In this document: positions 10,761-56,179 of the stretch, in pieces
Layout: every line of letters starts with the position of its first letter
Position numbering within the stretch: the first letter of the stretch is position 1
Assembly (NCBI RefSeq): GCF_006345805.1
Contig: NC_043007.1
Span: forward strand, 72,912,001-72,976,000
Source of the DNA: Octopus sinensis
Lineage: Eukaryota
Length of the DNA stretch: 64,000 bases
Reading direction: 5' to 3'
The notes under the pieces: model-generated
Database searches by the model: none
Told to the model about the DNA's origin: nothing
The model's input: only the letters and a program-made list of their open reading frames with translations
Made by a program: the position numbers and the translations under genes

Positions 10761-10803
10761 ATGTACATATATATACAAACATATATATACATGTATATAT
10801 ATA

Positions 10804-10849
<46 letters not shown>

Positions 10850-11029
10850 ATACAAATATATACATATATATATATATATACATATATATATACACATACA
10901 TATATATATACAAATATATATATACATATATACATATTCTTTTATATGTTTCAGTCCAATGACTGGGACCATGCTGGAGTACTGCCATTGTGATCATCTT
11001 TCCACAATCCACCTTTGTCAGAGCAGCTT

Positions 11030-16529: not shown

Positions 16530-19447
16530 CAGGGGTGGGCAAACTACGGCCCGCGGGCCGCATGCGGCCCGCCGATAGCTTTTATGGATCCCAACTTCTA
16601 TGCAGATACTTCGTAACTGTTTCAGTTGTACGGTAATTCACAATAGTTTGCATTTTATTTCAGTTCACTGTTTCGCACCTTCACAAAATTATCCGCTGTT
16701 TGTTTGTTTCAGCTACTGTGAAGCGATGAAAAATTTTGAGAAATATTCCTATGACATCATAATAAAACACATTTCTGGGTGAAGATATCTTTTCTGTGTT
16801 TTCTCGTCAGACCCTACAAACTCAAAAATTAATAGAACAATGAAACAAGTATTGTGGCAATACAACGAGTCAATCGATATGCTTGAAACATTCAAATAAA
16901 TAAATCACGTGATAGATGGTGAAGAGGGCATGATGGACGATGCGTTTCATTCCAATGAAGAAGCCGGCCAGGTTAATAAAAGGGCTTGAACCAGCTTTTT
17001 CTGGACACAGAGCTGTGGTTGGTTATCATTCACTCTATCGATTATTTGAATTTAGTACAGATATGAGTGTTTCAAACTAGCTTTTGTTGTCTGATAACAT
17101 TTACCCAAAATGAGTTGTTCGAAGCTATCTAAAAAGCGAAAAATTGAAGAGGAATATCGTGTTTTTAATGAAAATTGGACTGAAAAGTATTTCTTTACCA
17201 ACGTTGGAGTGAAAGCTGCATGTTTGATTTGTTCTGAAACAGTTGCTGTGTTCAAGGAATATAATTTGAAACGCCACTTTCAAACGAATCACGCCAATTT
17301 TGGACACAATTTATCAAAACAAGAACTGCAAAAGAAAGCAAATGATCTGACAAAACGTTTGAAGCAACAGCAAAATGTGTTTGATAAAACTTCCTCTTTA
17401 CAAAGGAATGCGACAAAGGCAAGTTTTATATTGGCCAACAAAATTGCAAAGCAAAACAAGTCATTCGCAGAAGCAGAATTTATCAAAGATTGTATGGTTG
17501 ATGCTGTCAGCGTTGTGTGTCCTGGAGTTAAGTCAAAAGTAGAAGCCATTTCCCTGTCACGAAGAACTATTGTTCGTCGCATTGATGCAATTGCCGTGAA
17601 TATTCATGAACAGCTGTTAACAGCCAGTGGTCGATTTCAGTGGTTTTCTATTGCTTTAGATGAGAGTACTGATATTCAGGATACTGCTCAGTTACTCATT
17701 TACATCAGAGGAATTGACGAAAACTTTGAAATTACAGAGGAATTGTTATCTATGGAGTCTCTCAAAGACACTACTACTGGAAAAGATTTGTTCAACAGTG
17801 TCATTAACAGTTCAATCAGGTCTGGATTAACTCTAAATAAACTGGCCAGCATTACAACCGATGGAGCTCCTTCACTCACCGGTAAACATTCCGGCCTTGT
17901 GAAGTTGTTGAATGACAAAATCAAAGAAGATTTTCCACTACACAGTGTGTTGTCTTTTCACTGCATCATACATCAAGAAAGCCTTTGTAAGTCATCTTTA
18001 AAACTCAAACATGTCATCGAACCTGTGGTGCGTGCAGTGAATTTAATAAGATCACGGGGATTGAAACACAGGCAATTCCGAAGTTTCTTGGAGGATGTGG
18101 AGGCTGATTTTACTGATGTGCTGTACTACACAAATGTCCGCTGGTTAAGCACTGGAAAAGTTCTTAAGAGAGTATGGGACCTCAAAGCCGAGATTCTTAT
18201 GTTTCTCAAAATGCAAGACATCTCCTGTGACTTTTTAAACGAAATGGAGAGTGACAAATGGGTTTGTGATTTTGCATTTGCTGTGGACATAATGCAGAAG
18301 CTGAATGAACTTAACACAAAACTGCAAGGCAAAGGTATATTTGCTCATGAAATGTACCTGGAAGTGAAAGCTTTTCAATGGAAGCTTGGACTTTTTGCCA
18401 AGCAGCTGAATGAGCAAAAATTTATTCACTTCCCTCTGCTGAAAACACAGTCTGTTACACAAGAATCATCGGACAAGTACAGTTCCCAGTTGATGGCTTT
18501 ACAAAAGGAATTCATTAGAAGATTTGCTGATTTCAAGGCAGTTGAAGGCCTGTTCGATTTGCTTAACTCACCTCTTGCCTGTGACATTGAAACAACTACC
18601 GAGGAACTGCAGATAGAACTGATTCATTTGCAAGCCGACAATTCTTTAAAGATGATGTTTGAAAGTAAACCACTGGTCGAGGGTTTTATGCTTCTCTACA
18701 TTCAAAAAAGTTTCAAAATCTAAAAAAATTTGCAAGAAAGATGTTTGTGTTGTTTGCATCAACTTACATATGTCAGCAGACTTTCTCCATCATGAAAATT
18801 AACAAGGGGAAGAATCGATCACTTCTCACAGACTCAAATCTTCAGTCAGTGTTAAGAATCAGCACAAGCAACTTGACACCTAATTTTGACAAACTGGTAA
18901 ATGACAGTAGTCAGCTGCATCATTCTCATTGACATTGTTATTTACAGAGCCACTCTGTTTTTCAAATAAATGCTTCAGGTGACGTTTCTAATTTCAGATA
19001 TCAATTCATATTAATAAACTGTTATTTCTCTTTAAAATCTTTTATTTTGGGTATCCTAGAATTTAAGTATAATATTCATCATGGTGGTCCATAATATTAA
19101 GAGGTGGTTGACCACAATTAGTGCAGATTTTACTAGGAAAATTCCGTTCCTGGCAATTTGTAAGCAAATAGAACTGTCCAAAATAACCGAGGTTCCTGTA
19201 ATAATTTTAACTATAGGGGCAAATAACCGAAAAACATGAACCCGATACTCTAAAAAATAAATTAAATCACTCAAACCAGGAATATTTCACAAAATTTCCT
19301 TTCAATCAATTGTGTGTTTATAGGTCTATAACCGCTTTTAAAAATATTTTCACTTGATTTTTATAAATGAGGCCCGCCAAGGTTCTAAAGACACACTGTG
19401 CGGCCCGCGATCAAAAATATGTATGTATGTATATATGTATATATATG

Positions 19448-19729: not shown

Positions 19730-20843
19730 GTTAATGACTTTAGGATCAGGACTAAGTGAACACCCAGAAGATGACCAGCATGGAGAAGAAGTGTTTGGAA
19801 GCTTAAAGATTCTGCAAATGGTCAGAGATTTAGAGACATACTACTTGAAGCCTTTGACAAAATAGAAGGGGATATAGCTTCACATGGTGTAGAAGACAAC
19901 TGAAGGTTTCTACAGGACAACCTGCTGAGAGCAACTGACCAGATCTGTGGATGGTGCAAAGTCCCCTCTCAACCCAAAATAACGTGGTGGTGGAACAATG
20001 TTGTAGACAGGGCTATTAGAGAAAAGAGACAGGTTTGGAAGGACTGGAAGAACGGTGGTAGCAGGGAATTGTATCAGACTGCCAGAAGAGAAGCTAGGAG
20101 ACAGGTTTATTTAGCCAGAGAGAAGCAGATAAGAAAAAATTTGCCAATGTTCTGCGCTGTGGAGATCAAAGTCTTGAGGTATTTCGTGTTGCAAGACAGT
20201 GTGTGAGAGAGAATCGTGATGTTGTAGGAGAGAAATGTGTCAGCATGGATGGTGGTTCTCTTGTGCTAAATGGTGCTGCAAAGAGAGAGGTTTGGAAACG
20301 CCACTATGAAAAGTTGTTGAATAAAGAAAATGAATGGGATGAAGAGAGTCTGCCGAATGTCGACCCAACAAAGGAACCAGCTATCCGAGTTGACAGTACC
20401 TTGGTAGATAAAGCAATTAAAAGTATGAAGACAAGGAAAGCCCCCGGCCCATCAGGAATTACTGCAGAGATGCTCAATATATCTGGCAGTGTTGGCTATA
20501 GCCTGGTCACCCATATAGTTAACCAGGTGATACATGAAGGAGTCATACCCAATGACTGGTGTAGCAGCATAATAGTCAACTGCTACAAAGGTAAAGGTGA
20601 CACTTTAGATACAAACAATTACAGAGGTATCAAGCTGTTGGATCAGGTAATAAAGATTACGGAGAGGGTCATAGCCCAACTAATTAGGGATAGAGTCAGT
20701 TTAGATGAGACACAGTTTGGTTTCGTGCCAGGGAAAAGCATTACTGATGTTGTATTTCTGGTAAGACAGCTACAGGAGAAATACCTAGCCAAAGATAAGC
20801 CCCTGTACCTGGCTTTCGTTGACATGGAGAAGGCCTTTGACAG
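19730..20843 (+). mobile_element. RTE-clade LINE fragment
   Basis: TWWWN, KAPGPSGITAEML, NYRGIKLL, QFGFVPGKS and YLAFVDMEKAFD; homology stops abruptly at about 20843. Confidence 0.88.
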
Positions 20844-20929
20844 AACCCTAAATTTAAAGGTGAATTCTTTCGATTGTTGCATGAAAAGTGTGCAGAAATT
20901 CCACAGAGCTCATCAGTTCAATGCCAAAA

Positions 20930-22460
20930 AGACATGACATGTGAGGGTGATTTGCCAGGGCAGGGCCAATCCATAACATTACATGACATGTTGGGGATTC
21001 GCCAGAGGGGCAGACCCAACCCATAACATTACATGACATGTCGAAAATTCACCAAAGGGGCAGGGCCAACCCATAACATTACATGACATGTCAGAGATTC
21101 GCCAAAGGGGCAGGGTCAACCCATAACATTACATGACATGTTGGAAATTCGCCAGAGGGGTAGACACAACCCAAAGCATTACATAAGATGTCAGGGATTC
21201 ACCAGAGGGCCAGACAAAACCATAACATTACATGACATGTTGAAGATTCTCCAAAGGAGCAGGGCCAACCCATAACAGTACATGACATGTCAGATTCGCC
21301 AGAGGGGCAGACCTAACCCATAACATTACGTGACATTTTGGAGATTCGTCAGAGGAGCAGGGCCAATCCATAACATTACATGACATATTGGAGATTCACC
21401 AGAGGGGTAGAGCCAATCCATAATATTACATGACATGCTGGACATTCGCCAGAGGGGCAGACCCAACCCATAACATTACATGACATGTCAGGGATTCGCC
21501 AGAGGGGCAGACAAAATCATAACATTACATGACATGTTGGAGATTCGCCAGAGGGGCAGGGCCAATCCATAACGCTACATGACATGTCGAAAATTAACCA
21601 GAGGGACAGGGCCAATCCATAACATTACATGACACGTCGGGGATTCGCCAGAGGGGCAGACAAAACCATAACATTACATGACATGTCGGATTCGACAAAG
21701 GGGCAGGGCCAATCCATAACGCTACATGACTTGTCGAAAATTAACTAGAGGGACAGGGCCAATCCATAACATTACATGACATGTCAGGGAATCGCCAGAG
21801 GGGCAGACAACACCATAACATTACATGACATGTCGGAGATTCGCCAAAGGGGCAGGGCTAACCCATAACATTACATGACATGTCAAAAATTCACCAAAGG
21901 GGCAGGGCCAACCCATAACATTACATGACATGTCAAAGATTCGTCAGAGGGGCAGACCCAACCCATAACATTACATGACATGTCGGGGATTTGTCAGAGG
22001 GGCAGTGCCAATCCATAACATTACATGACAAATCAGGGTTTCACCAGAGGGGCAGACAAAACCATAACATTACATGACATGTTGAAGATTCTCCAAAGGG
22101 GCTGGGCCAACCCATAACATTACGTGACATGTCAGATTCGCCAGAGGGGCAGACCAAACCCATAACATTACATGACATGTCAGGGATTCGCCAGAGGGGC
22201 AGACCCAATCCATAACATTACATGACATGCCAGGGATTCGCCAGAGGGGCAGACAAAACCATAACATTACATGACATGTCAGAGATTCGCCAAAGGGGCA
22301 GACCCAACCCATAACATTACATGATATGTCAAAAATCCACCAGAGGGACAGGGCCAATCCATAACATTACATGACACGTCGGGGATTCGCCAGAGGGGCA
22401 GACGCAATCCATAACGTTACATGACACGTCAGCGATTCGCCAGAAGGGCAGACAAACCCA
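20930..22460. repeat. Tandem array of about 50-bp units, block 1 (about 31 units)
   Basis: Consensus CCATAACATTACATGACATGTCGGAGATTCGCCAGAGGGGCAGGGCCAAC; units start at 20971, 21021, 21071, 21121 and onward. Confidence 0.97.
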
Positions 22461-25327: not shown

Positions 25328-26768
25328 AAACTCTTCCCTTATATATGGAAAACTGCTAGTGTCATTCCTCTGTTCAAAAAGGGCGACCGCACATCACCTG
25401 TCAACTATCGCCCAGTCAGTCTCACTAGCTGTATTGCAAAACTGATGGAATCGTGTGTCAGAGAAACACTTTGGAACTTCTGGAGCTCACAGTCTCATCC
25501 GACCCTCACAATATGGATTTGTCCCTAACTCCAGCTGCAGTGATCAGCTTGTCGAGTTCCTTGAGGACATTACTCAGATCACTGACAGTGGCTCACGGGT
25601 GGATGTTGTCTACCTTGACTTTGCTAAGGCTTTCAACTCTGTGCCACACAAAAGGCTTATGGTGAAACTCTCTGCAATGGGTGTGGGGGATGACCTTTTT
25701 AACTGGTTGAAATCCTTCATTCTCAACCGAAAGGAGGTAGTCACAGTTCTAGGACAGCATTCTACACCATATGAGATGTCATCAGGTGTACCACAGGGAT
25801 CTGTCCTTGGTCCCCTCTTGTTTGTGGCATACATTAATGACATAGATACAAATTTAAAGAATGCCACAGTATTGAAATATGCAGATGACATCAAGCTGTA
25901 CCTTGAAATCAAGAGGACAGATCCTGTTGTCTACAGCTCTTTCCTGCAATCAGACCTGGACACAATGCAGCAATGGATCACAGACTGGCAACTGAAACTG
26001 GCTGTGGACAAGTGTACCACCATGCATTTTGGAAGAAAAAACCCTAAGTCCACATACTCCCTCCACAACACTGATATCAAGAAATCCTCTTGCGAGCGTG
26101 ACCTAGGCATTACTGTCAGTAGTGATTTGCGTTGGACAAAGCATATCTCTAAAATTGTCAAGAAGGCCGAGGGTGTCTTGGCATCACTCAGCAAGACTTT
26201 TGTTAGCCGCTCTCCAGCCATCTATTTAAAACTGTATACAGCTATGGTACGACCACACTTGGAATTCGCATCATCAGTTTGGAATCCCTATCTTGCTCAG
26301 AACATTGACCTCCTGGAATCTGTTCAGAGACGTGCAACCAAACGCATACCCTCCATCAGACACCTACCATATTCTGAGCGCCTTGTTTCCCTGGGCATGG
26401 ATTCACTGAAGCTCCGGCGTCTTGCGACGGACTTGGTAAACGCCCACAAAGTTGTCAACCACCTCACCAATAACAACACTGAACACCTTTTTGATCTCCA
26501 TGTGTCTAACACACGTGGACATGCCTACAAAGTCAGAAAACAACACAGCTCCCATGACTTTCAGAAACATTTCTTCATGCTCAGAGTTGCTGAAGTATGG
26601 AATAAACTGCCTGCGTCAGTTGTTGACTGCCATGACACTGCATCCTTTAAGGCCCTCATGCTTTCCGAAATCCGTCGAAACTACACCTGATTATATATGC
26701 ACTTTAGATGAGTTGTAGTGCACCTGAGCACTGTACACAATGTTTATTATTATTATTATTATTATATT
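25328..26768 (+). mobile_element. CR1-like LINE, 5'-truncated RT with (TTA)n tail
   Basis: NYRPVSLTS, QYGFVPNSSC, YLDFAKAFNSV, SGVPQGSVLGP, YADDIKL and RPHLEFASSVWNP. The 3' UTR hairpin GTGCACCTGAGCAC is followed by (TTA)n. Confidence 0.92.
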
Positions 26769-28971: not shown

Positions 28972-29690
28972 TTATACTGATGAGTCATTGTACTCATTGA
29001 TCTGTTCCAACATATAACTTACAGGGACTGAAAAAATACTACGTTCACATCCATCTGAAAAGTTTGCACTGTAATCAGGCATTTCATTTAAAGATTCCAT
29101 TTTCTTAGGGCAAATATATTTGTCTTCAAACCAATTGGAATTATTTTCTTCAAATGTGGCAGCATTCTTAATTGTGTTTGTCAAAGAGTTAAATTTATGA
29201 TTGAGCTTGTTACTCTTGACACGAATAGCGAGCTCTTGATGCACTCTTGATCGATGGATTTTTTTAATAAGCGAGTTCAACTCTTTTGTAAGAGTGTAAC
29301 ACTTGATTGAAGGTAATTCACTGCTGATACTGGAGTTTGGTACCTGAGGAAACTTACAAATGATAAGTTTGTTGCTTGCATTAAGTTCTCTAAGAAGGGA
29401 AACTGTCAACAGTGCTGAGTTATCCTCTTTTAAAAAATTTATGTAATCTTGGTTGCTTTTCCATGCCTGAATTCTTTTGTGAAGAGCTTTGGAGTAAACA
29501 AGAATTATAAAATCAGACTTTTGAATTTCTAAACTCAGTCTTAATGGATCACCACCTTTCACTAGCCGAGCAGCAACTTCTAGTTTACATTTACTCTTAT
29601 TCATGAAAGATATAAACTTATCAATGGCTTCACAGTGGTAAGTATGGTCCTCTGTATAAAATAACAGCCCTCTTTTCTCTTGGAGTGTTC
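28972..29690 (-). CDS. IL-17 receptor-like protein, terminal exon with SEFIR domain
   Basis: Acceptor tattttcag at 29691. LLFYTEDHTYHCEAIDKFISF...EIQKSDFIILVYSKAL...LIICKF...CYTLTKELNSLIKKIH matches the SEFIR pattern (box 1 hydrophobic-Y-S/T-x-D-H; AD/SD-x-VIIVCS). Stop at 28972. Confidence 0.85.
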
Positions 29691-31229
29691 CTGAAAATAT
29701 AAATTCACACAATCAATAATAAAATATCAACAATATATGAGAATTAAAGGATTGAAATTCTTTAACTACATACAAGATCAACAGAATTAATCATACCATT
29801 TTACATGGCCCAGAAAAATAAAATTCTAAAACCAGCCACAATCAAACTTGAATTCAGAAAAGTGAGATTTCAAAATAGATATAATCATCTACAGAGGAAG
29901 TAAAGAAGTTATGTGGTCACTTGACATGCAAGAACTTTTAAATGTGACCTTAAAAAATGTGGCTGTCTAATCTTAATCTGATATCAGTTATTTAAACAAG
30001 GGTTATTGAGTTTCTAGAGAAATAGATCATTCCTAATAATAATAACTCTAAGCCATGTTCAAAGACACTTCACTTTACTAACTTAGTCACCAACTTCTTA
30101 AATTGATCTTTTTATGTGTTTCAGTTATTGGATTGTGGCCATGCTGGGGCAGTGCCCAATAGTTATTTTTTAAGTCTGGTACTTATTCTATCAGTCTCTC
30201 TTGCCACACAGCTATATTATAAGGATGGAGACAAACCAACACCAGTTCTCAAGAGATGGAGGGGAACAAACAAAAATACACACACACTGTCGATTTCTTA
30301 TAGTTTCAATCTTCCAAATGTACTCAGAAGGCCTTGGTTGGCCAAAGGCTACAGTAGAAGACATTTGAACAACAAGTCACACAGTAGGACTGAACCTAAG
30401 ATCACATTGTTTGGAAGCAAGCTTATATATCAATAAAAATATTCTCACATTCACACACACATATAAATAATGATAAGACAGGCTGTAAACTTTCATTCAT
30501 CGGAGAATCAAGGCTGTTTTATTTCACTGAACATTTCTGTGAATCTGTTGTAGTCCACCTAGCTGTAATAAGTATCTAATAAACCAATATCACAATTAGT
30601 TATAGTAGTATTACCATTACTGTCATGATTATTACAATCTCTGTTGATATATAATTATTACTTTGTCACCCATTATTGCTAATATAATCCTACTGCTGTT
30701 ATAACTAGTACCACCAGCACTTATTTTGATATTAGCAACCACAAGCTCTATCAATCATTCATTCTTCACATATATTCTAACAACCTTTACCTATCTTTCT
30801 TCATCCTTCTGTCTCTATGCTTTCTTCTATATTACCTTCTGGAACATGTTACCTTGAAGGTACACTCAAGTACCTCATCACCACAATCTCTCTTTTGGCA
30901 CCATTCCCTGTAACCCACCTACCCTTATATGAAATTGGGAAGCCTTGAATCTCCCCAACAGCAATAAACTTTTCTGGTTTTTCCCATCATATTTGAACCT
31001 CACATAAAACCAACTCATACTCTGATACTCTCTCTCTCAGTCTTGCAGATTACAAGGCAACATCACTAATGCTGGTGCCACCAGTACATATTTTCAAGTA
31101 GATGGCATAAAGAAGGCAATCCAGCCACAAGAACAATTGGAGAGAGATGTGATCCTCCAGTCTGTTGGATCTTGCTGAAATGATCAATTCATGCCAGCAT
31201 GGCAAGCGGACATGTTATGACCATAATAT

Positions 31230-34070
31230 TAAAGACTGCTTTAAAGATCGATGAGTTACCTCTTCTAGGTTCAGTAAAAAAGTCAGAGATAACAATGTTC
31301 TAGGATGCCCAGGAGGCTCCCTAGAAGTAGCAGATAGTTTCTGTTATCTAGGTAACCTAATTAGCAGCGGAAGCAGTGGAAGTATAGGATAAGGAGCAGT
31401 TAGAGAACTTTTAACTCTTTTAGTAACAAAAGTCCTCTCTCCCAGAGTGAAAGGCAGATTGTATGATGCCTGTGTATGAAACAGCAATGCTTTATGGTTG
31501 TGAAACTTGTTCTAAGAATTCAGAAGATATGTAAAGACTAGAGAGAAATAAAACTAACATGCTATGATGGACGGGTAATGTTAGTGTGCGTGTGCAACAA
31601 AGTACGTATGTACTGAAAGAAAAAATGGGCATTAGAATCATCAGATATTCTTGAACATATGCTGGGCAAGCCCCAGTTGTCTTTCATGGAGAGCATGGGG
31701 GCCATGGAATTGGTTCCTGAAATGAGGAGGGAACAAGGCTACTGGAGATCAGTGATGCAAATGACTTAATGATCTGCAACACCAACTTCAGAAAGCCAGC
31801 CAGTCACCTGATAACCTACAAATCTGGTGACCATGCTACACAGATTGATTACATTCTCACCAGAAAGTGGGATTCATGGCTGCTCATAAATGCAAAGACC
31901 TTCCCTGGAGAAGAATGTACCACACAGCATAGGTTACTCATTAGTTACTTCAAACTACTGGCACAAAGGATCCCAAGAAGCAACCAAGTTTCGAAAAAGA
32001 AGATATGGAAGCTTAAGGATCCTTTGAACAGTCAGAGATTTAAAGATGTCCTAAATGAAGCATTTAATGAGAAGGAGGAGGACTTGTAACATAGAGGATA
32101 ACTGGAAGCTCCTACAAGACAACTTACTGAGAGCTACAAACAAAATTTGTGGCTAGTGCAAAGTGCCAAACAGGCCTAAGGTGATGTATGGTGGAACAGT
32201 GTAGCTGACAGGGCCATCAGAGCAAAGAAACAGGCTTGGAAGGATTGGAAGGGTGTTGGTAGCAAGGAGCTAGATCAGGCAGCTAGAACGGAAGCTAGGA
32301 AGCAGGTATATTTAGCCAGAGGTAGAGCAAAAAGGAAGAAGTTGACCAATGTTCTGCAGCATGAGGACCATCAGCTTCAAGTGTTTTGGTTTGCAAGACA
32401 GTGTGCCAGGGAAAATTATGATGTGGGAGAGAAGTGTGCTCACATGGATAATGGTTCACTTGCATTTAGTGACTCAGCAAAAAGAGGCTTGAAAGTGCCT
32501 CTATGAAAGGCTGCTAAGTGTAGAGAACTCATGGGAGGAGGAGAGTCTGCTTATGGATCCAACAGAGGGACTATCAATCCAAATAGACAGAAGCATTTTA
32601 GGCAAAAATATGAAAGATATGAAGATGGGGAAAGCCTTCGGCCCATCAGGAATCACCACTGAGATGCTTAAAATATCTGGTGGTGTGGGCTATGGTTTAG
32701 TTGCCCATATATTTAAGCAGGTAGTACACAAAAAAGACATACCCAATGGCTGGTGTAGCAGCACCATAGTCAACTGCTACAAGGTGACACCTTAGATAGA
32801 AATAATTACAAAGGCATCAAATCGTTGGAACAAGTGATGTAAGTCACGGAGAGGATCATAGCCCAACTAATTAGGGAGAGAATTGGTTTAGATGAGATGC
32901 AGCTTGGTTTTGTGCCAGGGAAAAGGCACCTCTGATGCTACATTTCCAGAGTGGCAGTTGCAGGTGAAGTACCTAGCCAAAGATAAACTTCTGTACTTGA
33001 CTTTTGTTGACATGGAGAAAGCCTTTGACAGGATCTCCTGTTCCCTTATCTGGTGGTCAATGCAGAAACTAGGGATAGATGAGTGGTTGGTGAGAGTAGT
33101 ACAAGCTATGTACAAGGATGCAGTCAGTAAGGTGAGGGTTGGCAACAAGTATAGCGATGAATTCAAGGTAGAAGTAAGAGTTCACCAAAGATCAGTCCTC
33201 CACCCACCTCTTGTTCATCATAGTCCTCCAGGCAATAACAGAGGAATTTAAGATGGACTGCCCCTAGGAGCTCCTCTGTGCTGAGGATCTTGTTCTTAAA
33301 GCTGAATCACTACCAGAACTAGAGAAGAAATTTCAGGCATGGAGGCAATGCCTAGAAGCAAAGGGCCTCAAATGTGTATAGATGAGGAGAGCTGTGTAAA
33401 GAAGTGCTGATCTCTAACTGTAGAGGGAACCTGTGGAAGAGGTAGACCCAGGAAGACATGGGACAAGGTGGTGAAGTATGATCTTCAAATGTTGGGCCAC
33501 ACAGAGGCAATGACTAGTGACCGAGACATTTGACAATATGCTATGCTTGAGAGGAACCATCAAGTCAAATGAAATCACAGTTATGGCCAATGCCGGAATC
33601 ACATAACTGGTACCCATGTTGGTGACATGTAAAAAGCACCTTTCGAGTGTTGGGCCTCATGGAGGTAATGTGCAATGCTGGTGTCACATATCTAACACCT
33701 GTGCTGGTGTTGTATAACTAGCACCTGTGCCTTTCAAGAATCAGTCCTCACGGAGCAATGACAAATGACCAAGACCTTCAGCAATATGCCATGCTTGAGA
33801 AGAAGACCCATCAAGTTACATGAAATCCTAGTTGTGACAGCTACCAGTGTCATGCAACTGGCATCTATGCTAGTGGCACATAAAAGCACCCATTATACTC
33901 TCAGAGTGGTAGGCATTAGGAAGGGCATATAGCTGTAGAAACCATGCCAAATCAAACTGGAGTCTGGTGGAGACTCCAGCCTGCCAGCCCTGGTAAAACT
34001 GTCCAACCCATGCCAGCATGGACAATGGATGTTAAATGATGATGATGATGTTAATGATGATGATGATATT
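31230..34070 (+). mobile_element. Decayed RTE-clade LINE with 3' (GAT)n tail
   Basis: MICNTNFRKPASHLITY, QIDYIL, FVDMEKAFDRI and LIWWSMQKLGIDEWLVR; ends ...GGATGTTAAATGATGATGATG. Confidence 0.8.
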
Positions 34071-34332: not shown

Positions 34333-34521
34333 CTAAATTTCAAACATTATCCACACAATGTGCCGAAAGAAACTACGATGGGGGCCCTCCAGGAGGTCCA
34401 GCATGAAGACCGTTTTCCCACACCCGGTCATTCCACAAATAATTGCAGAGTGGGGGCCCGGTGGAAAGAGTTGATGATACGAAGTATCAGTATAAGTTGA
34501 GCACTGAGACGAATCGGCCAT
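34333..34521 (-). pseudogene. Truncated A32/FtsK-like packaging ATPase (Polinton-type)
   Basis: PHSAIICGMTGCGKTVFMLDLLE Walker A motif, immediately downstream of the capsid frame. Confidence 0.75.
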
Positions 34522-35360
34522 CTTCGATGTTGAGCTGTGTGCCCATAATGATGTACAGGTAGACGTTCAATACACCCACGGCCTCTACCGCTTTCAGGAT
34601 CTGGATGGTCACACCCTCGCTGGCATTCTCAATGCGCCGGCCACTGCCATGGAGCTGGTCATTGTCCGTGGTGTGGAGGTCATGCCAGAGGGTGAACTTG
34701 GAGGTCAAGAACTACCCCAAAGACATGTCTTTAAGAGCAAGGTCTTTCACGACCATGGCCACCTCGAGATGTCACTTGCAGCCGGCGGCAAAGAACATCT
34801 TTGCTTCGACCCACTGCTGGTATGCATGCAGGCCTTGGCTGTACAGCTTGTTGGGGACCCCCTCAATGGTAACTTCTACGTTGGTTATCTTGGGGTTGTA
34901 GAAGGCCTTGGTGCCCCGCTGAAAGGCTTGATGCACAGCAACATCCTCAAACAACAACAGAATGCCCTTCATCGAGCGAGCAGGCATGTTCAGGTTAACG
35001 TTCCACAAAGTGTTGCTCTTGTTGGTTGCAATTTTGCGGTACCGCAGTACACGGTCGTACAGGATGGCCAGGCAGCCACTGTACTGGTTGCGGATCATCC
35101 TTGCCAGTTCAGGGAGTGTGACCATGTCATACTCCAGGCAGATGTTTTCAATGGAGTAACTGGGGTTAGCATCTCCAGTGGCCTGGACCATGAGGGAGTA
35201 GTCGTTAAATGTCAACTCCTACTCGAGCCTATCACCAAGTGCTGACTGGTAGAAGGGCATATGGCTCTCTAGAAGCTTGAAGTCGAGGGGAATGTAGAAG
35301 TGGTTGCCATAGGCTTCTACAATGGCACCGTCAGCTCCACCTGAGACACCGTCCCCAGCA
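34487..35360 (-). pseudogene. Polinton/Maverick-type major capsid protein, C-terminal part
   Basis: One continuous frame with three in-frame stops: FYIPLDFKLLESHMPFYQSALGDRLE*ELTFNDY...YNPKITNVEVTIEGVPNKLYSQG...LHGSGRRIENASEGVTIQI...YLYIIMGTQLNIEDGRF. Recognised as similar to invertebrate Polinton capsid proteins from memory. Confidence 0.75.
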
Positions 35361-35365
35361 CTCAC

Positions 35366-35800
35366 TTGAAGTTTGGTGACGTTCCAGTTGATGAACACGA
35401 TGTAGCCACAAAAAGGTATGTCGATAGCCGGAAGCCTCTCATAACCATGTGGGCTGAACGAAGTGGCACTCTTGGAACGGGCCAATATGAATGGTCATTC
35501 GGTGCTGGTGCTAATCTACCAATGCATGGCTACAACATGATGGCTGCAGGCAGGGTTCACCGAATGCGACTAACTGTAACCAGAGTTACCACTTCCCCGG
35601 GCACCATAGCAACGGTCAATATTGTGGTTAACGGGATAACATACATCATATGGGGTAACCTCAGACCAATACTCTGGTACTAATACATTTGGGACCCCAC
35701 TATAGCTTGCCCAATGCGACCGAGTAAGCTTCAGGTCAGCTACGACCAACGCTGATGTCCTCACTGCGTTTTAATTGAACTCGACCTGTAGCTTTGCCAT
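35366..35800 (+). pseudogene. Polinton-associated fibre/minor-virion-like protein fragment
   Basis: DEHDVATKRYVDS resembles the DAATKxYVD motif of viral fibre proteins, followed by beta-rich sequence; frameshifted. Confidence 0.45.
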
Positions 35801-35817
35801 AGTTACTCCATAACATC

Positions 35818-36510
35818 ATGAAGCAAGCAACTGCTCCACCAGCTGATAGCACATCAGTTAACAGCGAATCTGCTGGCAAGGCATACATCACACTAAGTTG
35901 TACGCCAACACTTTATCCACATCTGCCTTATCTCATTGATACTGCACAATCCCACTCGCTTCAAGAGGTCTCACAACTGGAAAAAGAACGACTTGAAGAC
36001 GAGAGGGACAAACAGGGTCAACTGTACAAAAAATACTGCCATGGGGTCAATGTTGTCGATGGCGTTGACACAGTGTTGGGGATGGGCATCGGTGGTGTGG
36101 GCCTTCTGTCTACCATTATTGTGGCCCCAGTAGTCTTGGGCCTTGAAATTGCGGCCCTGGCATGTGGCAGCCTTGGAGTAATAGGCAAGTTTGTTGGCCA
36201 CCGTCTCACAGTCAAAGCCAAAAAGCATAACGAGGTCAGACTCCTGGCAGAGAGCAAGCTGAATACCATCGCAGACCATGTCTCGAGTGCATTCATGGAT
36301 GGTTGAATCTCAGATGAAGAGTTTCGCCTCATTCTTGGTGAGCTCAACAAGTATGATCAGATTAAGGCAGAGATCCAGGCTGGAGCTAAAAAAGCACATG
36401 CTTCAGTGAAACCTCCGGTGTTGGATGAAGAGATAAAAAACTCGCTTATTCAGAGAGGCTGGGATGAGGTCAGGGCCAGTTTCATAAAGAAGTTGGTTGC
36501 ACCATAATCT
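35818..36510 (+). pseudogene. Polinton-associated hydrophobic helical protein
   Basis: ERDKQGQLYKKY...GVDT...LLSTIIVAPVVLGLE...KAKKHNEVRLLAESKLNTIADHVSSAFMDG*ISDEEFRLIL: one stop, frame continues to about 36510. Confidence 0.55.
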
Positions 36511-37331
36511 GCTTTATGAGGCCAAAAAGAGCACCACACAGCCTGCTTCCATACACCGTTACTCTGTAACTATCACAGCTTTCAGCCACTTTTTTATTTA
36601 TGTTCCCTTTGGGCCACCATACTGCTGTTATGACATCGTCATGTTTACTTCCTGGTTCAGCCATGTGCTATGACTACGTCATGTTTACATTCTGCCTTGT
36701 GCTATTATTTACTTCCTGTCCCACTTTGAAAAACCACAAGCATTTCACATAGCTGCATCAGCCTTCTAGAATGTATCGGAATATACATAGCTATGGATAG
36801 CAAAAAGGGCTGTTAAGTGGTGCTAAGTGCTGTTAAGGGCTGTTAAGTCTGTCGGTTTATATAAGCTGTAAATTAGTTGTCACACCTCCTAGACCGTGAC
36901 AAGTTTCTATCAGCGTGACAGGAATATCATAGCATGACAAAAATGGATGTAGACAGACCAAAAAAGAGAGTTTTCTCGTTTTTGGAGCAAATAGTCAAAG
37001 AAACAAACGTGTCTAAAGGCAAAGCACGTCCGGAATTGGCCAGAAAACTGAATGAACGAACAAGACATCTACAGTAAAGGAGAAAACAGAGAGAGAGGCT
37101 GAAAAAATAGCAATGGACTTAGAAACCACGGAAGCTCAAATACAGCTGGTCAAGGAGGACATTCAAAGGCTAGAGTCTGTGGTAGAGGAAGGGACAGATG
37201 GTGAGGATGAGTAAATGCCTCAGTCTTTCGGCTGTTAGTCTCAACAGTCCTATATGTGGAACTCTGATTGCTCCCACTTGATGGCCTATTCATGTAATGG
37301 AATGGGTTCAGGCACACTGACACTACCAGGA

Positions 37332-37382
37332 GCCATTAATACCTGCCAGGTGTTCTGATGAGGCCTTACAGGCCGAAATGGC
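37332..37382 (+). ncRNA. Type III hammerhead ribozyme fold
   Basis: GCCAU-U / AAUACCU-GCC-AGGUGUU / CUGAUGA / GGCC-UUACA-GGCC / GAAAUGGC: complete core with three helices; predicted cleavage after 37337 (AUU). Confidence 0.75.
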
Positions 37383-39819
37383 ACAGAGGTGAGTCATTTA
37401 TAGCTATTCTAGGGTTTGGGGTAAACCCTGGTTGTCGAGCTCCCCTGCTGTAAATATAAGCCCTTAGGCTGGCAAGGGGTCGTCCACCCTATGGCGAAGC
37501 TATAAGGCTCCTATTGGTACTCAGTATAGTATAGGGTTGGGATTACAAACGTGTATCATTGGGCTGGGGCCTGCCAGGGGTGTGGGGCGGGCCCTATCAT
37601 GTGATCTGTCCCAGAACCCCCACTAGATGTATATCTGGCTCCAATCCCAGCTTCCTACGTAACTGAGCCTGGTGGACCCCACACAATTTATTGATGCACT
37701 GTTTCCCGCAGCGCTTGGTCCACCCAACGACCAACCACTCGCATCAATTGTACTCAATCATACTGTTGTTTATACATAAGGCAAGCATTTGTCTAAATAA
37801 AAAATCGAACAGAGTATAAGCAGCCTGAGGTTAGCTGGGGCTATGTGGAAAATGGGCTGGACCCTATCATGTGATCTGTCCCAGAACCCCCATTAGATAT
37901 ACTACTCTTGACTGGCTTTTATTAATGCCTCCAACATGAACGATATATTTAAAAATCATTTGCTAGCAATGGGTTTCTGTATTTGGCATAAACTATTTAT
38001 GTGAAAAAAAAAGAAAATTTCAAAGATGAAATATATGAAATCTATATATAGGTCGATTTTAACAATGTTAATAAATGCAATCAGTTTCCATTTCAGGAAT
38101 TACAAAATTTGAACCACAAATTAGCAATATTTTGCCTACTCACACCTAAAAAAATTCCCGTTCTCATTGACTGATTATACATGGATATGTATGTAAAGAT
38201 ATATAATTGTAGGATATCACTTTTTCTCTTATTCTTTCTTTTTCATTATCTCTCATAATACAGAATATAACTGAAACTATCATCCTTTTTTTCAGTGTTG
38301 CACAGTGAGATCTTTATGAATATTAATTGCGACTGTGTTTTTTCTTTGAAGCTAAAAATTGTCTTTTCTTGGGTGGATTTTCCACCTAGCTCCTAAACTA
38401 TCAAAATGTTATATGAACAATTCAAATGCTAATAATACTTAACAGGTACAGCATTTTCCTTGTGAACTGTTAACAAGTCTTAAGTGCAGCCTGGCAATAA
38501 CACTATTTAAATGTTACACCATATAAAACGAAAACAAGCTCACGATGTGATTTTACAAAACTATCATTTCTCATAACCCGTTAGCGCCCATGGTCCTTTT
38601 TTTTTTTTGGCCCAGAAGGATCACGCATCTGTAGTAAGAAACTTTGTAGCAGATATATTTTGAACAGAAATCAACTAGATTTGTTCTGTGGAAATTTTCT
38701 TCTGACGCTAAAATACAAGTTTAGACAAAGATTTTTTTCATTGACTAAGAAAATATTAACCGAAGCCATCCTAGTTTTCAACCAAAAATTGTTCTGAAAT
38801 TTTAGTTCCTGGACACTCCAAAGTAGCTTATAAAAACCCAGGATTTCCAATATATTTTTAGTGACATCTAAGCTGCTACAGGAGAATTTGTCCTCACATC
38901 TGCATGTCTTGAAGTGGTGAATTATTTTTCAAACTCATGAAGTCGCCCTTGCATTATCTGTATTCTCCATCATGACCTTAAGTAATTTACCTAAATTCTT
39001 CGTGGAGCAGTTTGAAGAATTAGTTAAGAAATTTAATACTCGTCATTCTTCTAGACAAGTAAATTCTTAGAAGAAATTAGGAAAAGCCTTTTATCACCTG
39101 CCTTCTCGTAAATCTTAAAGTAAACTAAGGGAGAGCACCTGTTATATTTATAATACAGTTAAAACTATTGAATTTGAATTAAATAAAAATAACATTGAAT
39201 AAAATCTTGCGAGTCAGATTTCTATAATTTCTTGAGTATTGGTTTGAAAACAACCTGCAGGTTACTCACAAATAATTTTAACCACAAAAAGAAAAAAAAA
39301 ATAATCAGCAAAGAAGACAGGTTAAACATCATATTTCTGCAACACCTGTATTTTTCTGCGATATCTTTAGTCATCAAGACTGGAGTGTTTTTCAAATATT
39401 ACACCTAGTGTCTGATGTATATTGTCAACACTGATGTCTCAATTTTCAGTACGGTGTGAAAATCTTGAGGGAAAGGATACACTCAGTTTCAATCAAAAAC
39501 TTTTTGATAAGTAGTACTTATATCCAACCCATATTTGTATATAGTATAAACAATTGTTCTAACTGTCCAATAAAGTTAAGAAAATCTTTGAAAGTAATTT
39601 TGCTCAAATATAGCATGCTCTAAATGTTTGGTCCTAATATAAGGAGCATGGTCACTAGAACTCCATTTTTTCAATTTTCTATGGAAGTTGCATAAAAGAG
39701 AAAACAATCTGCAGAGATAAACTTTTTTATGCTGAAAACATTTTCTATGTATAGACAGCTGTGAAAAAAAAATTGTTCTTTTCTTTCTTTATTATTCTAA
39801 TTTTAGTTTTATTTTCAGA

Positions 39820-41047
39820 TGTTCTCCCATGGTTTTCTACCATTCAGTCAAGTCATTCTATTCAGTTCATGGTACAGTAAATTATGCAGAAGAAAATGAG
39901 TCTCCTAGTGATGAAAACTTTATTGATATTGTTGAACTTCCTCCACCAGTAAATGAACTGACTGATGAAGAAGACTTTGATGATGAGATTTTAGATGATG
40001 AGAACAGAAATCTAACCATTATCTTGTAGGATGTGCCAGAAAGTGTTGAGCTTCATCGGTATGATAATGAAGAAGTAACATAACCAAAAGGAAAAAAAAA
40101 AAGAAAAGCTCAGATTTCTCTTGGAAAAAGACTGATTTTTCCAAATTTGCATCACCAACTACTGATGGAGCAGATGATAGAATGAAATCAATGAAAGATA
40201 AAGTACTTGGCAAGAGCCAAGTTGAGATTTTTTAATCTCTGAATCAGAAGTTCAAGCAGTTTGGAATATTCTTTAAGAGGCTGTCAGTAGATGAAAACAT
40301 AGTAAGATACTATGGAAGAAGCTATCTAAAACAATTTATAAGAGTAAGCCAATAAGATTTGGTTTCAAGAAGTGGGTGCTTTGTTGTGCCACTAGTGGCT
40401 ATTATTTTAGAATGGATTTATATCAAGGAAAGCAAAAAAAAATCCTACTTCCAATACCAGGAATGATGACAGTCTAGGTTCAAGAGTCGTTTTATCAATG
40501 ACCAATCACTTAGAGAACCCCAATGATCATGAAATTTATGTTAACTTTTTCTCAAGTTATAACTTTAGGAATCAGAATCATGGGTACAGTATATTCAAAC
40601 AGAACATCCAGATGTCCCATGAAGGATAACAAATCCAGGAAAAAGGAAAATCATGGATCCTATGACCACAAATTTGAAGAAAAGGAAGAATTCTTTGTTT
40701 TGAAGTGGCATGACAACAGAATTTTCACAATTGCAAGCAATCATCAGTCTGCCACCCCTGTTGGAAATACTAAAAGATGGTCAACCAGCCATAGAAAAGA
40801 AATATTTGTTCCTCAGCCATTTCTCATAGCCAAGTATGACAAATATATGGGAGGTGTGGACCACTTAGACTGGCTTATCCAAAAGTATCACATCTCTGTT
40901 ACATGTAAGAAGTGGTACTTTAGTCTATTCACAAATTTCCTCGACACTATAATAGTTAATTCTTGGATTGTACACTGTTTTGCAAATGGAAATACTTTGA
41001 CATTACTAGACATTACTAGATTTCAAGAGGTCAGTTACACAAGCTAA
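39820..41047 (+). pseudogene. Decayed piggyBac-type transposase
   Basis: Acidic N-terminus (LPPPVNELTDEEDFDD), LSVDE, KPIRFGFK, LKWHDN, YDKYMGGVDHLDWLI..Y and KKWY...NSWI. Confidence 0.8.
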
Positions 41048-55692: not shown

Positions 55693-55955
55693 AATTATAT
55701 ATATATATATAATACATATACATATATTATATATACATATATATAAATAATTGAGTAGTTGAATGAATTATCTTATTATGGATAATTCGGTTAACCGATA
55801 CCTGGGTAGCAAATTCACGTCAGAGAAACACGGTTGAAGCTACATGCCTAGGGCAGAAATCACGTGCTATCGTGTGGAAATTTGTGTGTTTTTTTAAATA
55901 CAAATAAATGAAAGAATGGAGTTGAACGATGAATTAACAAAATTACTTTATTTTA

Positions 55956-56039
55956 TTTTCGACATATGTTTCGAAGGCTGCATATTCCTAATTTCGAAGG
56001 AAAAAGGGGTGCATTATGCCGCCTTCTCATCAGGAAAAA
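55956..56039 (-). ncRNA. Type I hammerhead ribozyme fold (Penelope-associated minimal type)
   Basis: UUUUC / CUGAUGA / GAAGGCGGCAUA...UAUGCAGCCUUC / GAAAC-AUAU-GUC / GAAAA; GUC site between 55961 and 55960. Confidence 0.8.
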
Positions 56040-56179
56040 CAAGGAACTTATTCCTTCGAAATTAGGAATATGCAGCCTTCGAAATATATGTCGAAAATAA
56101 AATAAAAGAATTTTGTTAATTCGTCGTTCAACTCCATTCTTTCATTTATTTGTATATATATATATACATATACATATAC

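What the first reader, a model, noticed from the sequence alone, without database searches (positions are those of the whole stretch)
37332..37382. Type III hammerhead ribozyme fold adjacent to the Polinton relic
Seen: a perfect core (CUGAUGA, GAAA), 7-bp stem I hairpin, 4-bp GGCC/GGCC stem II, and 5-bp stem III, with possible distal pairing (TGACACTACC/GGTGAGTCA). Known: most reported metazoan genomic hammerheads are type I, linked to Penelope elements or retrozymes, and AUU is a permitted but weaker cleavage triplet. Inference: either an unrecognised ribozyme-bearing retro-element or a self-cleaving RNA belonging to the DNA virus. If it belongs to the virus, that would be a novel pairing.
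Basis: partly seen in the sequence, partly recalled or inferred. Interest (0 to 1): 0.8.

Follow-up and report, generated by a model that had tools for sequence, protein, structure and literature searches.

The report
Hammerhead ribozyme inside Polinton terminal repeat
The 51-base motif is a real, evolutionarily conserved self-cleaving-RNA (hammerhead) fold that belongs to the end-repeat of a Polinton/Maverick-like DNA virus element, sitting just behind a small gene, a pairing of ribozyme and DNA element that I could not find described.

Summary
Window 37332-37382(+) has a complete type III hammerhead: stem III, AUU site, 7-bp stem I, CUGAUGA, 4-bp stem II and GAAA. Rfam Hammerhead_3 scores it 33.4 bits, below the 48.5 cutoff.

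It is not a chance motif. I found six more intact copies in five other public sources. They are 89-95% identical, against 73-84% for the neighbouring gene and 11-42% downstream. The core never varies. All five stem substitutions keep pairing. The cleavage base is C or U.

In six copies the hammerhead lies about 115 nt behind the stop codon of a ~90-aa coiled-coil gene, on the same strand. It is 360-380 nt from the element end (about 520 nt in the window). Related loci carry protein-primed polymerase, a double-jelly-roll capsid domain and a 1.8-kb terminal inverted repeat containing this gene. The ribozyme is therefore inside the relic's terminal repeat, not merely beside it.

It belongs to a ~155-nt cassette (hairpin, spacer, hammerhead). 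The cassette also follows a different gene in one relative and is exactly absent in a sister lineage.

The most likely role is cis-cleavage of outward-running transcripts, defining the mRNA 3' end; this is inferred. The window copy sits in a decayed relic. This is a new context for a known ribozyme class.

The parts
37330..37384 (+). Type III hammerhead ribozyme. The strict motif is 37332-37382. The predicted cut is 3' of 37337. Stem I is 37338-37344/37348-37354. CUGAUGA is 37355-37361. Stem II is 37362-37365/37371-37374. GAAA is 37375-37378. Stem III is 37332-37336/37378-37382.
   Evidence: Sequence. Rfam RF00008 33.4 bits. Own model R1 87.5 bits. Six intact homologues elsewhere. Pair counts.
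37230..37384 (+). A ~155-nt 3'-UTR cassette: a conserved hairpin (GGCTGT..ACAGTC, 37230-37249), a spacer, and the hammerhead.
   Evidence: Aligns over its whole length with L069, L087 and with the 3' flank of a different ORF in L004. It is exactly absent in the L071 group.
37389..37394 (+). GTGAGT of an AG|GTRAGT motif that looks like a 5' splice site, 5 nt after the hammerhead. It is also the 3' arm of the proposed distal helix.
   Evidence: Present at the same offset in L069, L070, L082 and L085, and 27 nt after the hammerhead in L087. In the hammerhead-less L071 group it lies 17 nt after the stop codon.
36934..37215 (+). Small coiled-coil gene of the terminal repeat (about 90-93 aa when intact). 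It is broken here by one in-frame stop and one frameshift.
   Evidence: 76% nt identity to L031, which has an intact 93-aa ORF. 27 protein homologues.
36764..37907 (+). Terminal-repeat module of the Polinton-like relic: promoter-side repeats, small gene, cassette, and a GC-rich subterminal region ending in ..ATACTACTC.
   Evidence: Homology to L069, L082 and L087 starts at 36764-36849. The terminal motif is shared with the L069 and L087 ends. The L069/L070 and L076/L077 comparisons define the termini.
37583..37631 (+). Internal second copy (90% identical) of the last 49 nt of the element (37853-37901).
   Evidence: the repeat finder family D1.
35818..36507 (+). Conserved transmembrane/coiled-coil gene of the element. 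It is broken here by one in-frame stop.
   Evidence: 285 homologues at 55-72% identity. tblastn to L001-L003.
35384..35771 (+). C-terminal fragment of the gene that precedes the transmembrane gene in relatives. It is 5'-truncated and has at least one frameshift.
   Evidence: tblastn to the 315-aa gene of L002, two pieces in different frames.
34333..35485 (-). Neighbouring minus-strand ORF fragments: a P-loop piece with a weak Pox_A32 match, and pieces of a ~250-aa family of unknown function. Whether they belong to the same relic is not established.
   Evidence: Pfam PF04665, E 0.0015, below cutoff. 295 homologues without Pfam domains. AF2 model pLDDT 44.6, unusable.

Best explanation
The motif is a genuine type III hammerhead ribozyme. 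It is part of a ~155-nt 3'-UTR cassette in the terminal inverted repeat of one lineage of Polinton/Maverick-like DNA elements.

Proposed mechanism: the repeat carries a small coiled-coil gene transcribed outward, toward the element's end. The hammerhead is co-transcribed about 115 nt behind the stop codon. It most likely cuts the nascent RNA in cis. This defines the 3' end of that mRNA, or limits its amount, and uncouples it from whatever lies downstream: a 5' splice-site-like motif, the terminus and the flanking DNA.

Shown:
- the fold
- its conservation
- its fixed position and strand
- its membership of the element

Inferred:
- that it cleaves
- that cleavage serves 3'-end formation or insulation

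The window copy sits in a decayed relic with broken genes. It keeps every catalytic nucleotide but has the weaker AUU site.

My confidence is about 0.85 that this is a conserved hammerhead belonging to the element. It is about 0.4 for the 3'-end-processing role.
For: Seven intact copies come from six sources: the window; L004 (JAAUYG010174679.1); L069 and L070 (ENA ERZ26052378); L082 (ERZ21849168); L085 (GCA_022702835.1); and L087 (Tara Oceans ERZ907766).

Conservation:
- The hammerhead is 89-95% identical between lineages. The adjacent ORF is 73-84% identical, the rest of the 3' UTR 38-87%, and the sequence beyond about 20 nt downstream 11-42%.
- The CUGAUGA and GAAA boxes are invariant.
- The 16 inner base pairs are 100% paired in all seven copies.
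- The five stem substitutions are all wobble-compatible; none is disruptive.
- The cleavage base is C in four copies and U in three, never G.

Position:
- The hammerhead starts 104-116 nt after the stop codon, on the same strand.
- The same cassette follows a different 262-aa ORF at 106 nt in L004.
- No AATAAA or ATTAAA lies between the stop codon and the terminus in L069, L070 and L087.

Element identity:
- PF03175 pPolB lies next to the module in L069 and L070.
- An AAA_30 helicase lies next to it in L082 and L076.
- A DJR-like capsid domain occurs in L003.
- L076 and L077 are two outward-facing copies of the small gene 16.4 kb apart on one contig. Both lie within 98%-identical 1.8-kb repeats, giving an element span of 17.5 kb.
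- Independent insertions lose homology at the same terminal motif.
Against: - Self-cleavage has not been demonstrated.
- All copies score below Rfam's gathering cutoff, at 30-44 bits.
- There are no double compensatory changes in the inner helices, so covariation is not statistically significant; the shuffle control is not exceeded.
- A rod-like alternative fold is predicted to be more stable than the hammerhead fold in every copy.
- Stem I with a 3-nt loop and stem II with a 5-nt loop differ from the usual type III loop-loop design (PMC7936874), so activity at physiological Mg2+ is uncertain.
- The hammerhead is dispensable. It is absent in the amplified L071 group, deleted in L081, and absent in 19 of 20 transmembrane-gene loci with at least 900 nt of downstream sequence.
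- I could not show both ends of one hammerhead-bearing element.
- No transcript data were available.
Confidence: 0.6

Rival explanations
1. The hammerhead belongs to an independent small mobile or retro-element (retrozyme-like, Penelope-like or SINE-like) that merely inserted into, or next to, the Polinton-like sequence.
For: The ~155-nt cassette behaves as a discrete unit. It follows two unrelated ORFs, in opposite orientation relative to the transmembrane gene. It is exactly absent in the L071 group. Known metazoan genomic hammerheads mostly ride on retroelements (PMC6155905).
Against: There is only one hammerhead per locus, with no tandem or LTR-like duplication and no target-site duplication at the cassette borders. 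No reverse transcriptase is linked to it. In six loci from five sources it has the same position within the same terminal-repeat module. None of the other 57 metagenome loci and no other place in the 64-kb window carries a free-standing copy.
Confidence: 0.12
2. The ribozyme does not make the mRNA 3' end. Instead it releases or tunes a downstream RNA, or it acts as an expression damper like the Clec2 3'-UTR hammerhead. In that case cleavage competes with recognition of the adjacent 5' splice-site-like motif.
For: An AG|GTRAGT motif is conserved 5 nt after the hammerhead, and also in hammerhead-less relatives. The conserved alternative rod-like fold could act as an on/off conformer. The cassette is dispensable in a lineage that amplified to at least 12 copies.
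Against: No conserved splice acceptor was found between the motif and the terminus. No transcript evidence is available. The splice-site-like motif can equally be read as the 3' arm of an extended stem III.
Confidence: 0.2
3. The block is conserved for a DNA-level role in the terminal repeat, such as protein binding or replication, and its resemblance to a hammerhead is incidental. Alternatively the fold is catalytically dead.
For: It lies in a terminal inverted repeat whose subterminal part is full of short repeats. All copies are sub-threshold in Rfam. Covariation is not significant.
Against: A DNA-binding site would not be expected to keep all 11 core nucleotides, three helices, a non-G cleavage base and only pairing-compatible substitutions. 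0 of 300 simulated windows gave a motif this good. The cassette also occurs away from a terminus in L004.
Confidence: 0.08

Closest known systems
Type III hammerhead ribozymes (Rfam RF00008) of plant viroids, satellites, plant retrozymes and bacteria
   Same: Same core boxes and same topology: stem III open, stems I and II capped. It aligns end to end with the Rfam model.
   Different: It scores below the Rfam gathering cutoff. Stem I has 7 bp with a 3-nt loop, against the usual 6 bp with a 6-8-nt loop. It occurs as a single copy in a DNA element and is not part of a circular RNA replicon or an LTR (PMC7936874, PMC6155905).
Atypical type III hammerheads in invertebrate genomes and HDV-like circRNAs (termites, dipterans, D. 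pseudoobscura; PMC7936874)
   Same: These are type III hammerheads encoded in metazoan DNA. Loop 1 here contains GCC(A), which resembles the GCCR motif reported there.
   Different: Those have long helices I and II with a loop-loop pseudoknot (GCCR/YGGC). For the termite genomic copies, no recognizable ORFs were found within 2 kb. Here the helices are short, no YGGC loop is present, and the motif is tied to a gene in a virus-like element.
Clec2 3'-UTR discontinuous hammerhead of mammals (PMC6155905)
   Same: A type III hammerhead lying in the 3' UTR of a protein-coding gene, with a suggested role in 3'-end or polyadenylation control.
   Different: The Clec2 motif is discontinuous, with a very large helix I, and is a host gene feature. 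Here the motif is compact and rides on a mobile virus-like element.
Hammerheads of Penelope-like elements and metazoan retrozymes
   Same: Self-cleaving motifs embedded in the terminal repeats of mobile elements.
   Different: From established knowledge of those families, they are type I, often minimal and dimer-acting, and belong to retroelements. Here the motif is type III with a long stem III, in the terminal inverted repeat of a pPolB/capsid DNA element.

Membership tests
Hammerhead ribozyme, type III | Conserved core: CUGANGA between stems I and II, and GAAA between stems II and III | tested here: met
   Perfect in the window and invariant in all 7 copies.
Hammerhead ribozyme, type III | Three helices around the core, with stems I and II capped and stem III open | tested here: met
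   7-bp, 4-bp and 5-bp helices. 100% of cells are paired in the 16 inner pairs of 7 sequences.
Hammerhead ribozyme, type III | Cleavage triplet NUH, where H is not G | tested here: met
   AUU in the window, L085 and L087. AUC in L004, L069, L070 and L082.
Hammerhead ribozyme, type III | Score at or above the Rfam RF00008 gathering threshold of 48.5 bits | tested here: not met
   33.4 bits in the window and 30.0-44.1 bits in the relatives. This fails the curated cutoff but not the structural definition.
Hammerhead ribozyme, type III | Covariation supporting the helices | tested here: inconclusive
   Five one-sided pairing-compatible changes and no double changes in the inner helices. The shuffle control is not exceeded.
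Hammerhead ribozyme, type III | Site-specific self-cleavage giving 2',3'-cyclic phosphate and 5'-OH ends | not testable with these tools
   No biochemical or transcript data were available.
Hammerhead ribozyme, type III | Loop 1-loop 2 tertiary contacts typical of fast natural hammerheads | not testable with these tools
   The loops (GCC; UUACA) are nearly invariant, but their sizes are atypical (PMC7936874).
Polinton/Maverick-like element (the carrier) | Protein-primed family B DNA polymerase | tested here: met
   PF03175 lies on the gene next to the module in L069 and L070, and faintly in L091. It is not present in the window relic itself.
Polinton/Maverick-like element (the carrier) | Double jelly-roll major capsid protein and A32-like packaging ATPase | tested here: inconclusive
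   PF21738 DJR-like domain in L003, upstream of the transmembrane gene. The window has only a weak, sub-cutoff Pox_A32 P-loop fragment.
Polinton/Maverick-like element (the carrier) | Long terminal inverted repeats and a size of 15-20 kb | tested here: met
   L076 and L077 on one contig have 98%-identical 1.8-kb inverted copies, and the element spans 17.5 kb. This was shown for the hammerhead-less sister lineage and is inferred for the hammerhead-bearing one.
Polinton/Maverick-like element (the carrier) | Retroviral-type integrase and adenoviral-type protease | not tested
   Only pieces of at most 6.7 kb were fetched, and no integrase or protease gene lay in them.
Retrozyme / circular RNA with hammerheads | Two or more hammerheads in direct repeats flanking a unit that can be excised and circularised | tested here: not met
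   There is one hammerhead per locus. No second copy lies in the window or within 2 kb in any locus.

The most novel reading that the evidence does not exclude
One lineage of animal-associated Polinton/Maverick-like DNA elements uses a built-in hammerhead ribozyme, instead of a polyadenylation signal, to end the outward-directed transcript of its terminal-repeat gene. The ribozyme would also insulate that transcript from the element terminus and the flanking host DNA. The ~155-nt hairpin-plus-hammerhead cassette would be a portable 3'-UTR module that has moved between genes of these elements.
Probability: 0.3. Interest if true: 0.75.

Novelty: new variant of a known kind. Interest (0 to 1): 0.62.

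Why it matters
Hammerheads in animal genomes have so far been tied mainly to retroelements, satellites and circular RNAs. A conserved hammerhead in the terminal inverted repeat of a pPolB/capsid DNA element extends self-cleaving RNAs to a eukaryotic DNA virus-like lineage.

It also offers a natural example of a ribozyme placed at a fixed distance behind a stop codon where no poly(A) signal is seen. This makes one question testable with existing transcriptome data: do such elements use ribozymes for mRNA 3'-end formation or for insulation from read-through?

There is a practical consequence too. All seven copies fall below the Rfam cutoff, so standard annotation misses this family.

Tried and rejected
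- Rfam at gathering thresholds found nothing in the window.
- The second CTGATGA..CGAAA match, at 55992-56033(-), lies in a MITE-like palindrome and is not a hammerhead.
- My descriptor also gave a type I reading of the same core (37350-37457). I rejected it because the downstream arm is not conserved in relatives.
- The first three relatives of the transmembrane gene (L001-L003) have no hammerhead and no alignable downstream DNA.
- IMG/VR holds neither the motif nor relatives of the transmembrane gene.
- A pattern scan of bacterial and archaeal genomes gave five unrelated hits.
- RNAalifold and MFE folding do not recover the three-way junction.
- No other Rfam ribozyme replaces the hammerhead in hammerhead-less lineages.
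- No conserved splice acceptor lies between the GTRAGT motif and the terminus.
- The host species could not be identified. Accession searches in papers and the cluster look-up gave nothing.
- The minus-strand ORF 34772-35215 could not be assigned. It has no Pfam or PDB match and no similarity to the L003 capsid, and its AF2 model has pLDDT 44.6, so no fold search was run.
- The L004 262-aa ORF has no Pfam match.

Full report
**1. The observation**

Window 37332-37382(+) reads GCCAUU AAUACCU GCC AGGUGUU CUGAUGA GGCC UUACA GGCC GAAA UGGC. This is a complete type III hammerhead:
- a 5-bp stem III, including the A15.1-U16.1 pair
- an AUU triplet, with the cut predicted 3' of 37337
- a 7-bp stem I with a 3-nt loop
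- the CUGAUGA box
- a 4-bp stem II
- the GAAA box

Rfam's Hammerhead_3 model aligns end to end at 37330-37384 with 33.4 bits. E is 1.3e-5 on the 321 nt searched and 0.0026 on the window. This is below the gathering score of 48.5, so the default scan is empty.

A descriptor scan of 300 simulated windows gave no motif this good and 4 loose ones.

A second CTGATGA..CGAAA match at 55992-56033(-) sits in a palindromic MITE-like repeat and is not a hammerhead.

Thermodynamic folding prefers a rod-like alternative, in which strands of stems I and II cross-pair, by 1-7 kcal/mol. This is common for hammerheads but worth noting.

**2. Context in the window**

The motif lies in a GC-richer block that ends at about 37907. 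Upstream on the same strand are three genes:
- a 5'-truncated gene fragment (35384-35771)
- a transmembrane/coiled-coil gene (35818-36507), with one in-frame stop
- a small coiled-coil gene (36934-37215), with one stop and one frameshift

The hammerhead starts 115 nt after the small gene's stop codon.

Further left are minus-strand ORF fragments (34333-35485). One gives a weak Pox_A32 match. Beyond them is a LINE reverse-transcriptase fragment.

**3. Relatives**

The transmembrane protein has 285 homologues at 55-72% identity.

Three contigs (L001-L003) and 60 metagenome loci (L004-L063) were fetched, with flanks of 3 kb or less. L003 has a DJR-like capsid domain upstream.

A descriptor scan found a second hammerhead in L004, and a covariance model built from the two copies (R1) found no others among these loci. 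Of the 20 transmembrane-gene loci with at least 900 nt of downstream sequence, only L004 has one.

L031 is 76% identical to the window from the end of the transmembrane gene through an intact 93-aa small gene. Its contig stops about 15 nt before the hammerhead.

Searching with that 93-aa protein gave 27 homologues. Their contigs, fetched with flanks of 2 kb or less, gave four more intact hammerheads:
- L069 and L070 at 2387-2441
- L082 at 2387-2441
- L085 at 2377-2431
- L087 at 1540-1594

Each lies 104-116 nt after the small gene's stop codon, on the same strand.

L081 keeps the 5' third of the motif and has lost the rest by a deletion of about 217 nt.

The L071-L080, L083, L084, L088 and L089-L092 loci have no hammerhead and no other Rfam ribozyme.

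**4. Conservation**

Identity between lineages, by segment:

| Segment | Identity |
|---|---|
| 55-nt hammerhead | 89-95% |
| Small ORF | 73-84% |
| Rest of the 3' UTR | 38-87% |
| Beyond about 20 nt downstream | 11-42% |

Within the motif:
- The core boxes are invariant.
- The cleavage base is C (4 copies) or U (3 copies).
- The 16 inner pairs are paired in 100% of cells.
- The five stem substitutions are U.G/U-A, A-U/G.U, G-C/G.U (twice) and C-G/U.G. All preserve pairing.

There are no double compensatory changes in the inner helices, so the formal covariation test is not significant. The argument therefore rests on selective conservation and on the absence of any disruptive change.

All copies score 30-44 bits on RF00008.

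**5. The carrier**

- L069 and L070 have a pPolB gene (PF03175) next to the module.
- L082 and L076 have a large AAA_30 helicase next to it.
- The window and L085 have the transmembrane gene next to it.

L069 and L082 share the module at 96% identity but differ completely inside it.

On one contig, L076 and L077 are two copies of the small gene 16.4 kb apart, both pointing outward. They lie within 98%-identical 1.8-kb repeats, giving a 17.5-kb element with terminal inverted repeats.

Independent insertions (L069/L070, and L071/L076) lose homology at the same point. A terminal motif ending ..ATACTACT(C/G) is shared by L069, L087 and the window at about 37907.

The hammerhead is therefore subterminal. 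It lies 360-380 nt from the end in L069 and L087. In the window it lies about 520 nt from the end, because the last 49 nt are duplicated internally there.

That both ends of a hammerhead-bearing element carry a copy is inferred, not shown.

**6. A cassette**

The homology between L004 and the others covers a conserved hairpin (GGCTGT..ACAGYC, with a variable loop), a spacer and the hammerhead. It ends at the 3' strand of stem III.

In L004 this ~155-nt unit follows a different, 262-aa ORF at 106 nt. It is oriented toward the transmembrane gene.

In the L071 group the same unit is exactly missing, between GTCTTTC and AGGTGAGT.

A neighbour-joining tree of the small gene nests the L071 group and L081 among hammerhead-bearing lineages, which suggests loss. 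The tree rests on only 273 nt.

**7. Neighbouring signals**

An AG|GTRAGT motif follows the hammerhead by 5 nt, or 27 nt in L087. It is kept in hammerhead-less lineages.

No AATAAA or ATTAAA lies between the stop codon and the terminus in L069, L070 and L087. No conserved acceptor was found.

I cannot decide between these two readings.

**8. Interpretation**

The fixed distance behind a stop codon holds in two gene contexts. The motif is on the same strand as the gene, no poly(A) signal is present, and the position is subterminal and outward-facing.

The best reading is a cis-cleaving 3'-UTR ribozyme. It would end or limit the small gene's transcript and uncouple it from downstream sequence. 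Confidence in this mechanism is about 0.4.

The rivals are an independent mobile cassette, a regulatory or competing-splicing role, and DNA-level conservation. They are listed with their tests in the rival explanations.

The window copy is in a decayed relic, so it is probably no longer under selection, though its catalytic nucleotides are intact.

**9. Comparison with what is known**

- Type III hammerheads are typical of plant subviral RNAs, plant retrozymes and bacteria.
- Atypical type III motifs exist in some insect genomes and in HDV-like circRNAs (PMC7936874).
- A discontinuous type III motif sits in the mammalian Clec2 3' UTR (PMC6155905).
- Full-text searches found no paper linking hammerheads to Polintons/Mavericks or to terminal inverted repeats of DNA elements. 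The library is not exhaustive.

I rate this a new variant of a known kind.

**10. Limits**

- There was no transcript or biochemical evidence.
- The host species are unknown.
- Only pieces of elements were examined, by design.

Noticed in passing
L089 449-610, L090 424-585, L091 423-584, L092 437-598: A tRNA-Lys(CTT) plus tRNA-His(GTG) gene pair lies about 1.4 kb upstream of the small gene in the hammerhead-less outgroup lineage of these elements. L091 has a faint pPolB hit nearby.
   Followed up: partly
window 37389-37394; L069/L070/L082 2446; L085 2436; L087 1621; L071 group at +17 after the stop codon: A conserved AG|GTRAGT motif that looks like a 5' splice site lies downstream of the small gene in lineages both with and without the hammerhead. 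No conserved acceptor lies before the element terminus.
   Followed up: partly
window 37583-37631 and 37853-37901: The last 49 nt of the element, including the terminal motif, occur twice 270 nt apart. The only AATAAA of the region (37796) lies between the two copies.
   Followed up: partly
window 36626-36694: Two copies of a 29-nt motif (TGYTATGAC..CGTCATGTTTAC), 40 nt apart, lie in the region upstream of the small gene. Parts of it recur in L004, L007 and L031. It may be a promoter element.
   Followed up: no
L004 975-1140; L007 1041-1087: A tandem repeat of about 49 nt (3-4 copies) lies between the transmembrane gene and the inverted hammerhead in L004. A single unit is present in L007.
   Followed up: no
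window 55940-56090: A MITE-like perfect palindrome contains a chance CTGATGA..CGAAA match. It is surrounded by long (TA/TG)n microsatellites, which produce many sub-threshold mir-297-type Rfam hits.
   Followed up: yes
window 34772-35215(-): This ORF belongs to a ~250-aa protein family with hundreds of copies in large assemblies (60-70% identity). It has no Pfam or PDB match. Its function is unknown and the AF2 model was unusable.
   Followed up: partly
window 28972-29712(-): An ORF with a SEFIR domain (PF08357, 26.4 bits against a cutoff of 23). It may be a host immune-signalling gene fragment.
   Followed up: no
window 8288-11012(-), 20203-20937(+), 25455-26690(+), 31769-33251(+), 40523-41047(+), 17110-18723(+): The window is dense in transposable elements. 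It holds several LINE-type reverse-transcriptase ORFs, a piggyBac-type transposase fragment (PF13843) and a 537-aa ORF with a Spin-doc zinc finger.
   Followed up: partly
L068 3515-3572(+): A bacterial MAG contig (Gammaproteobacteria) picked up by the pattern scan folds as a plausible, unrelated type III hammerhead (35 bits on my model).
   Followed up: no
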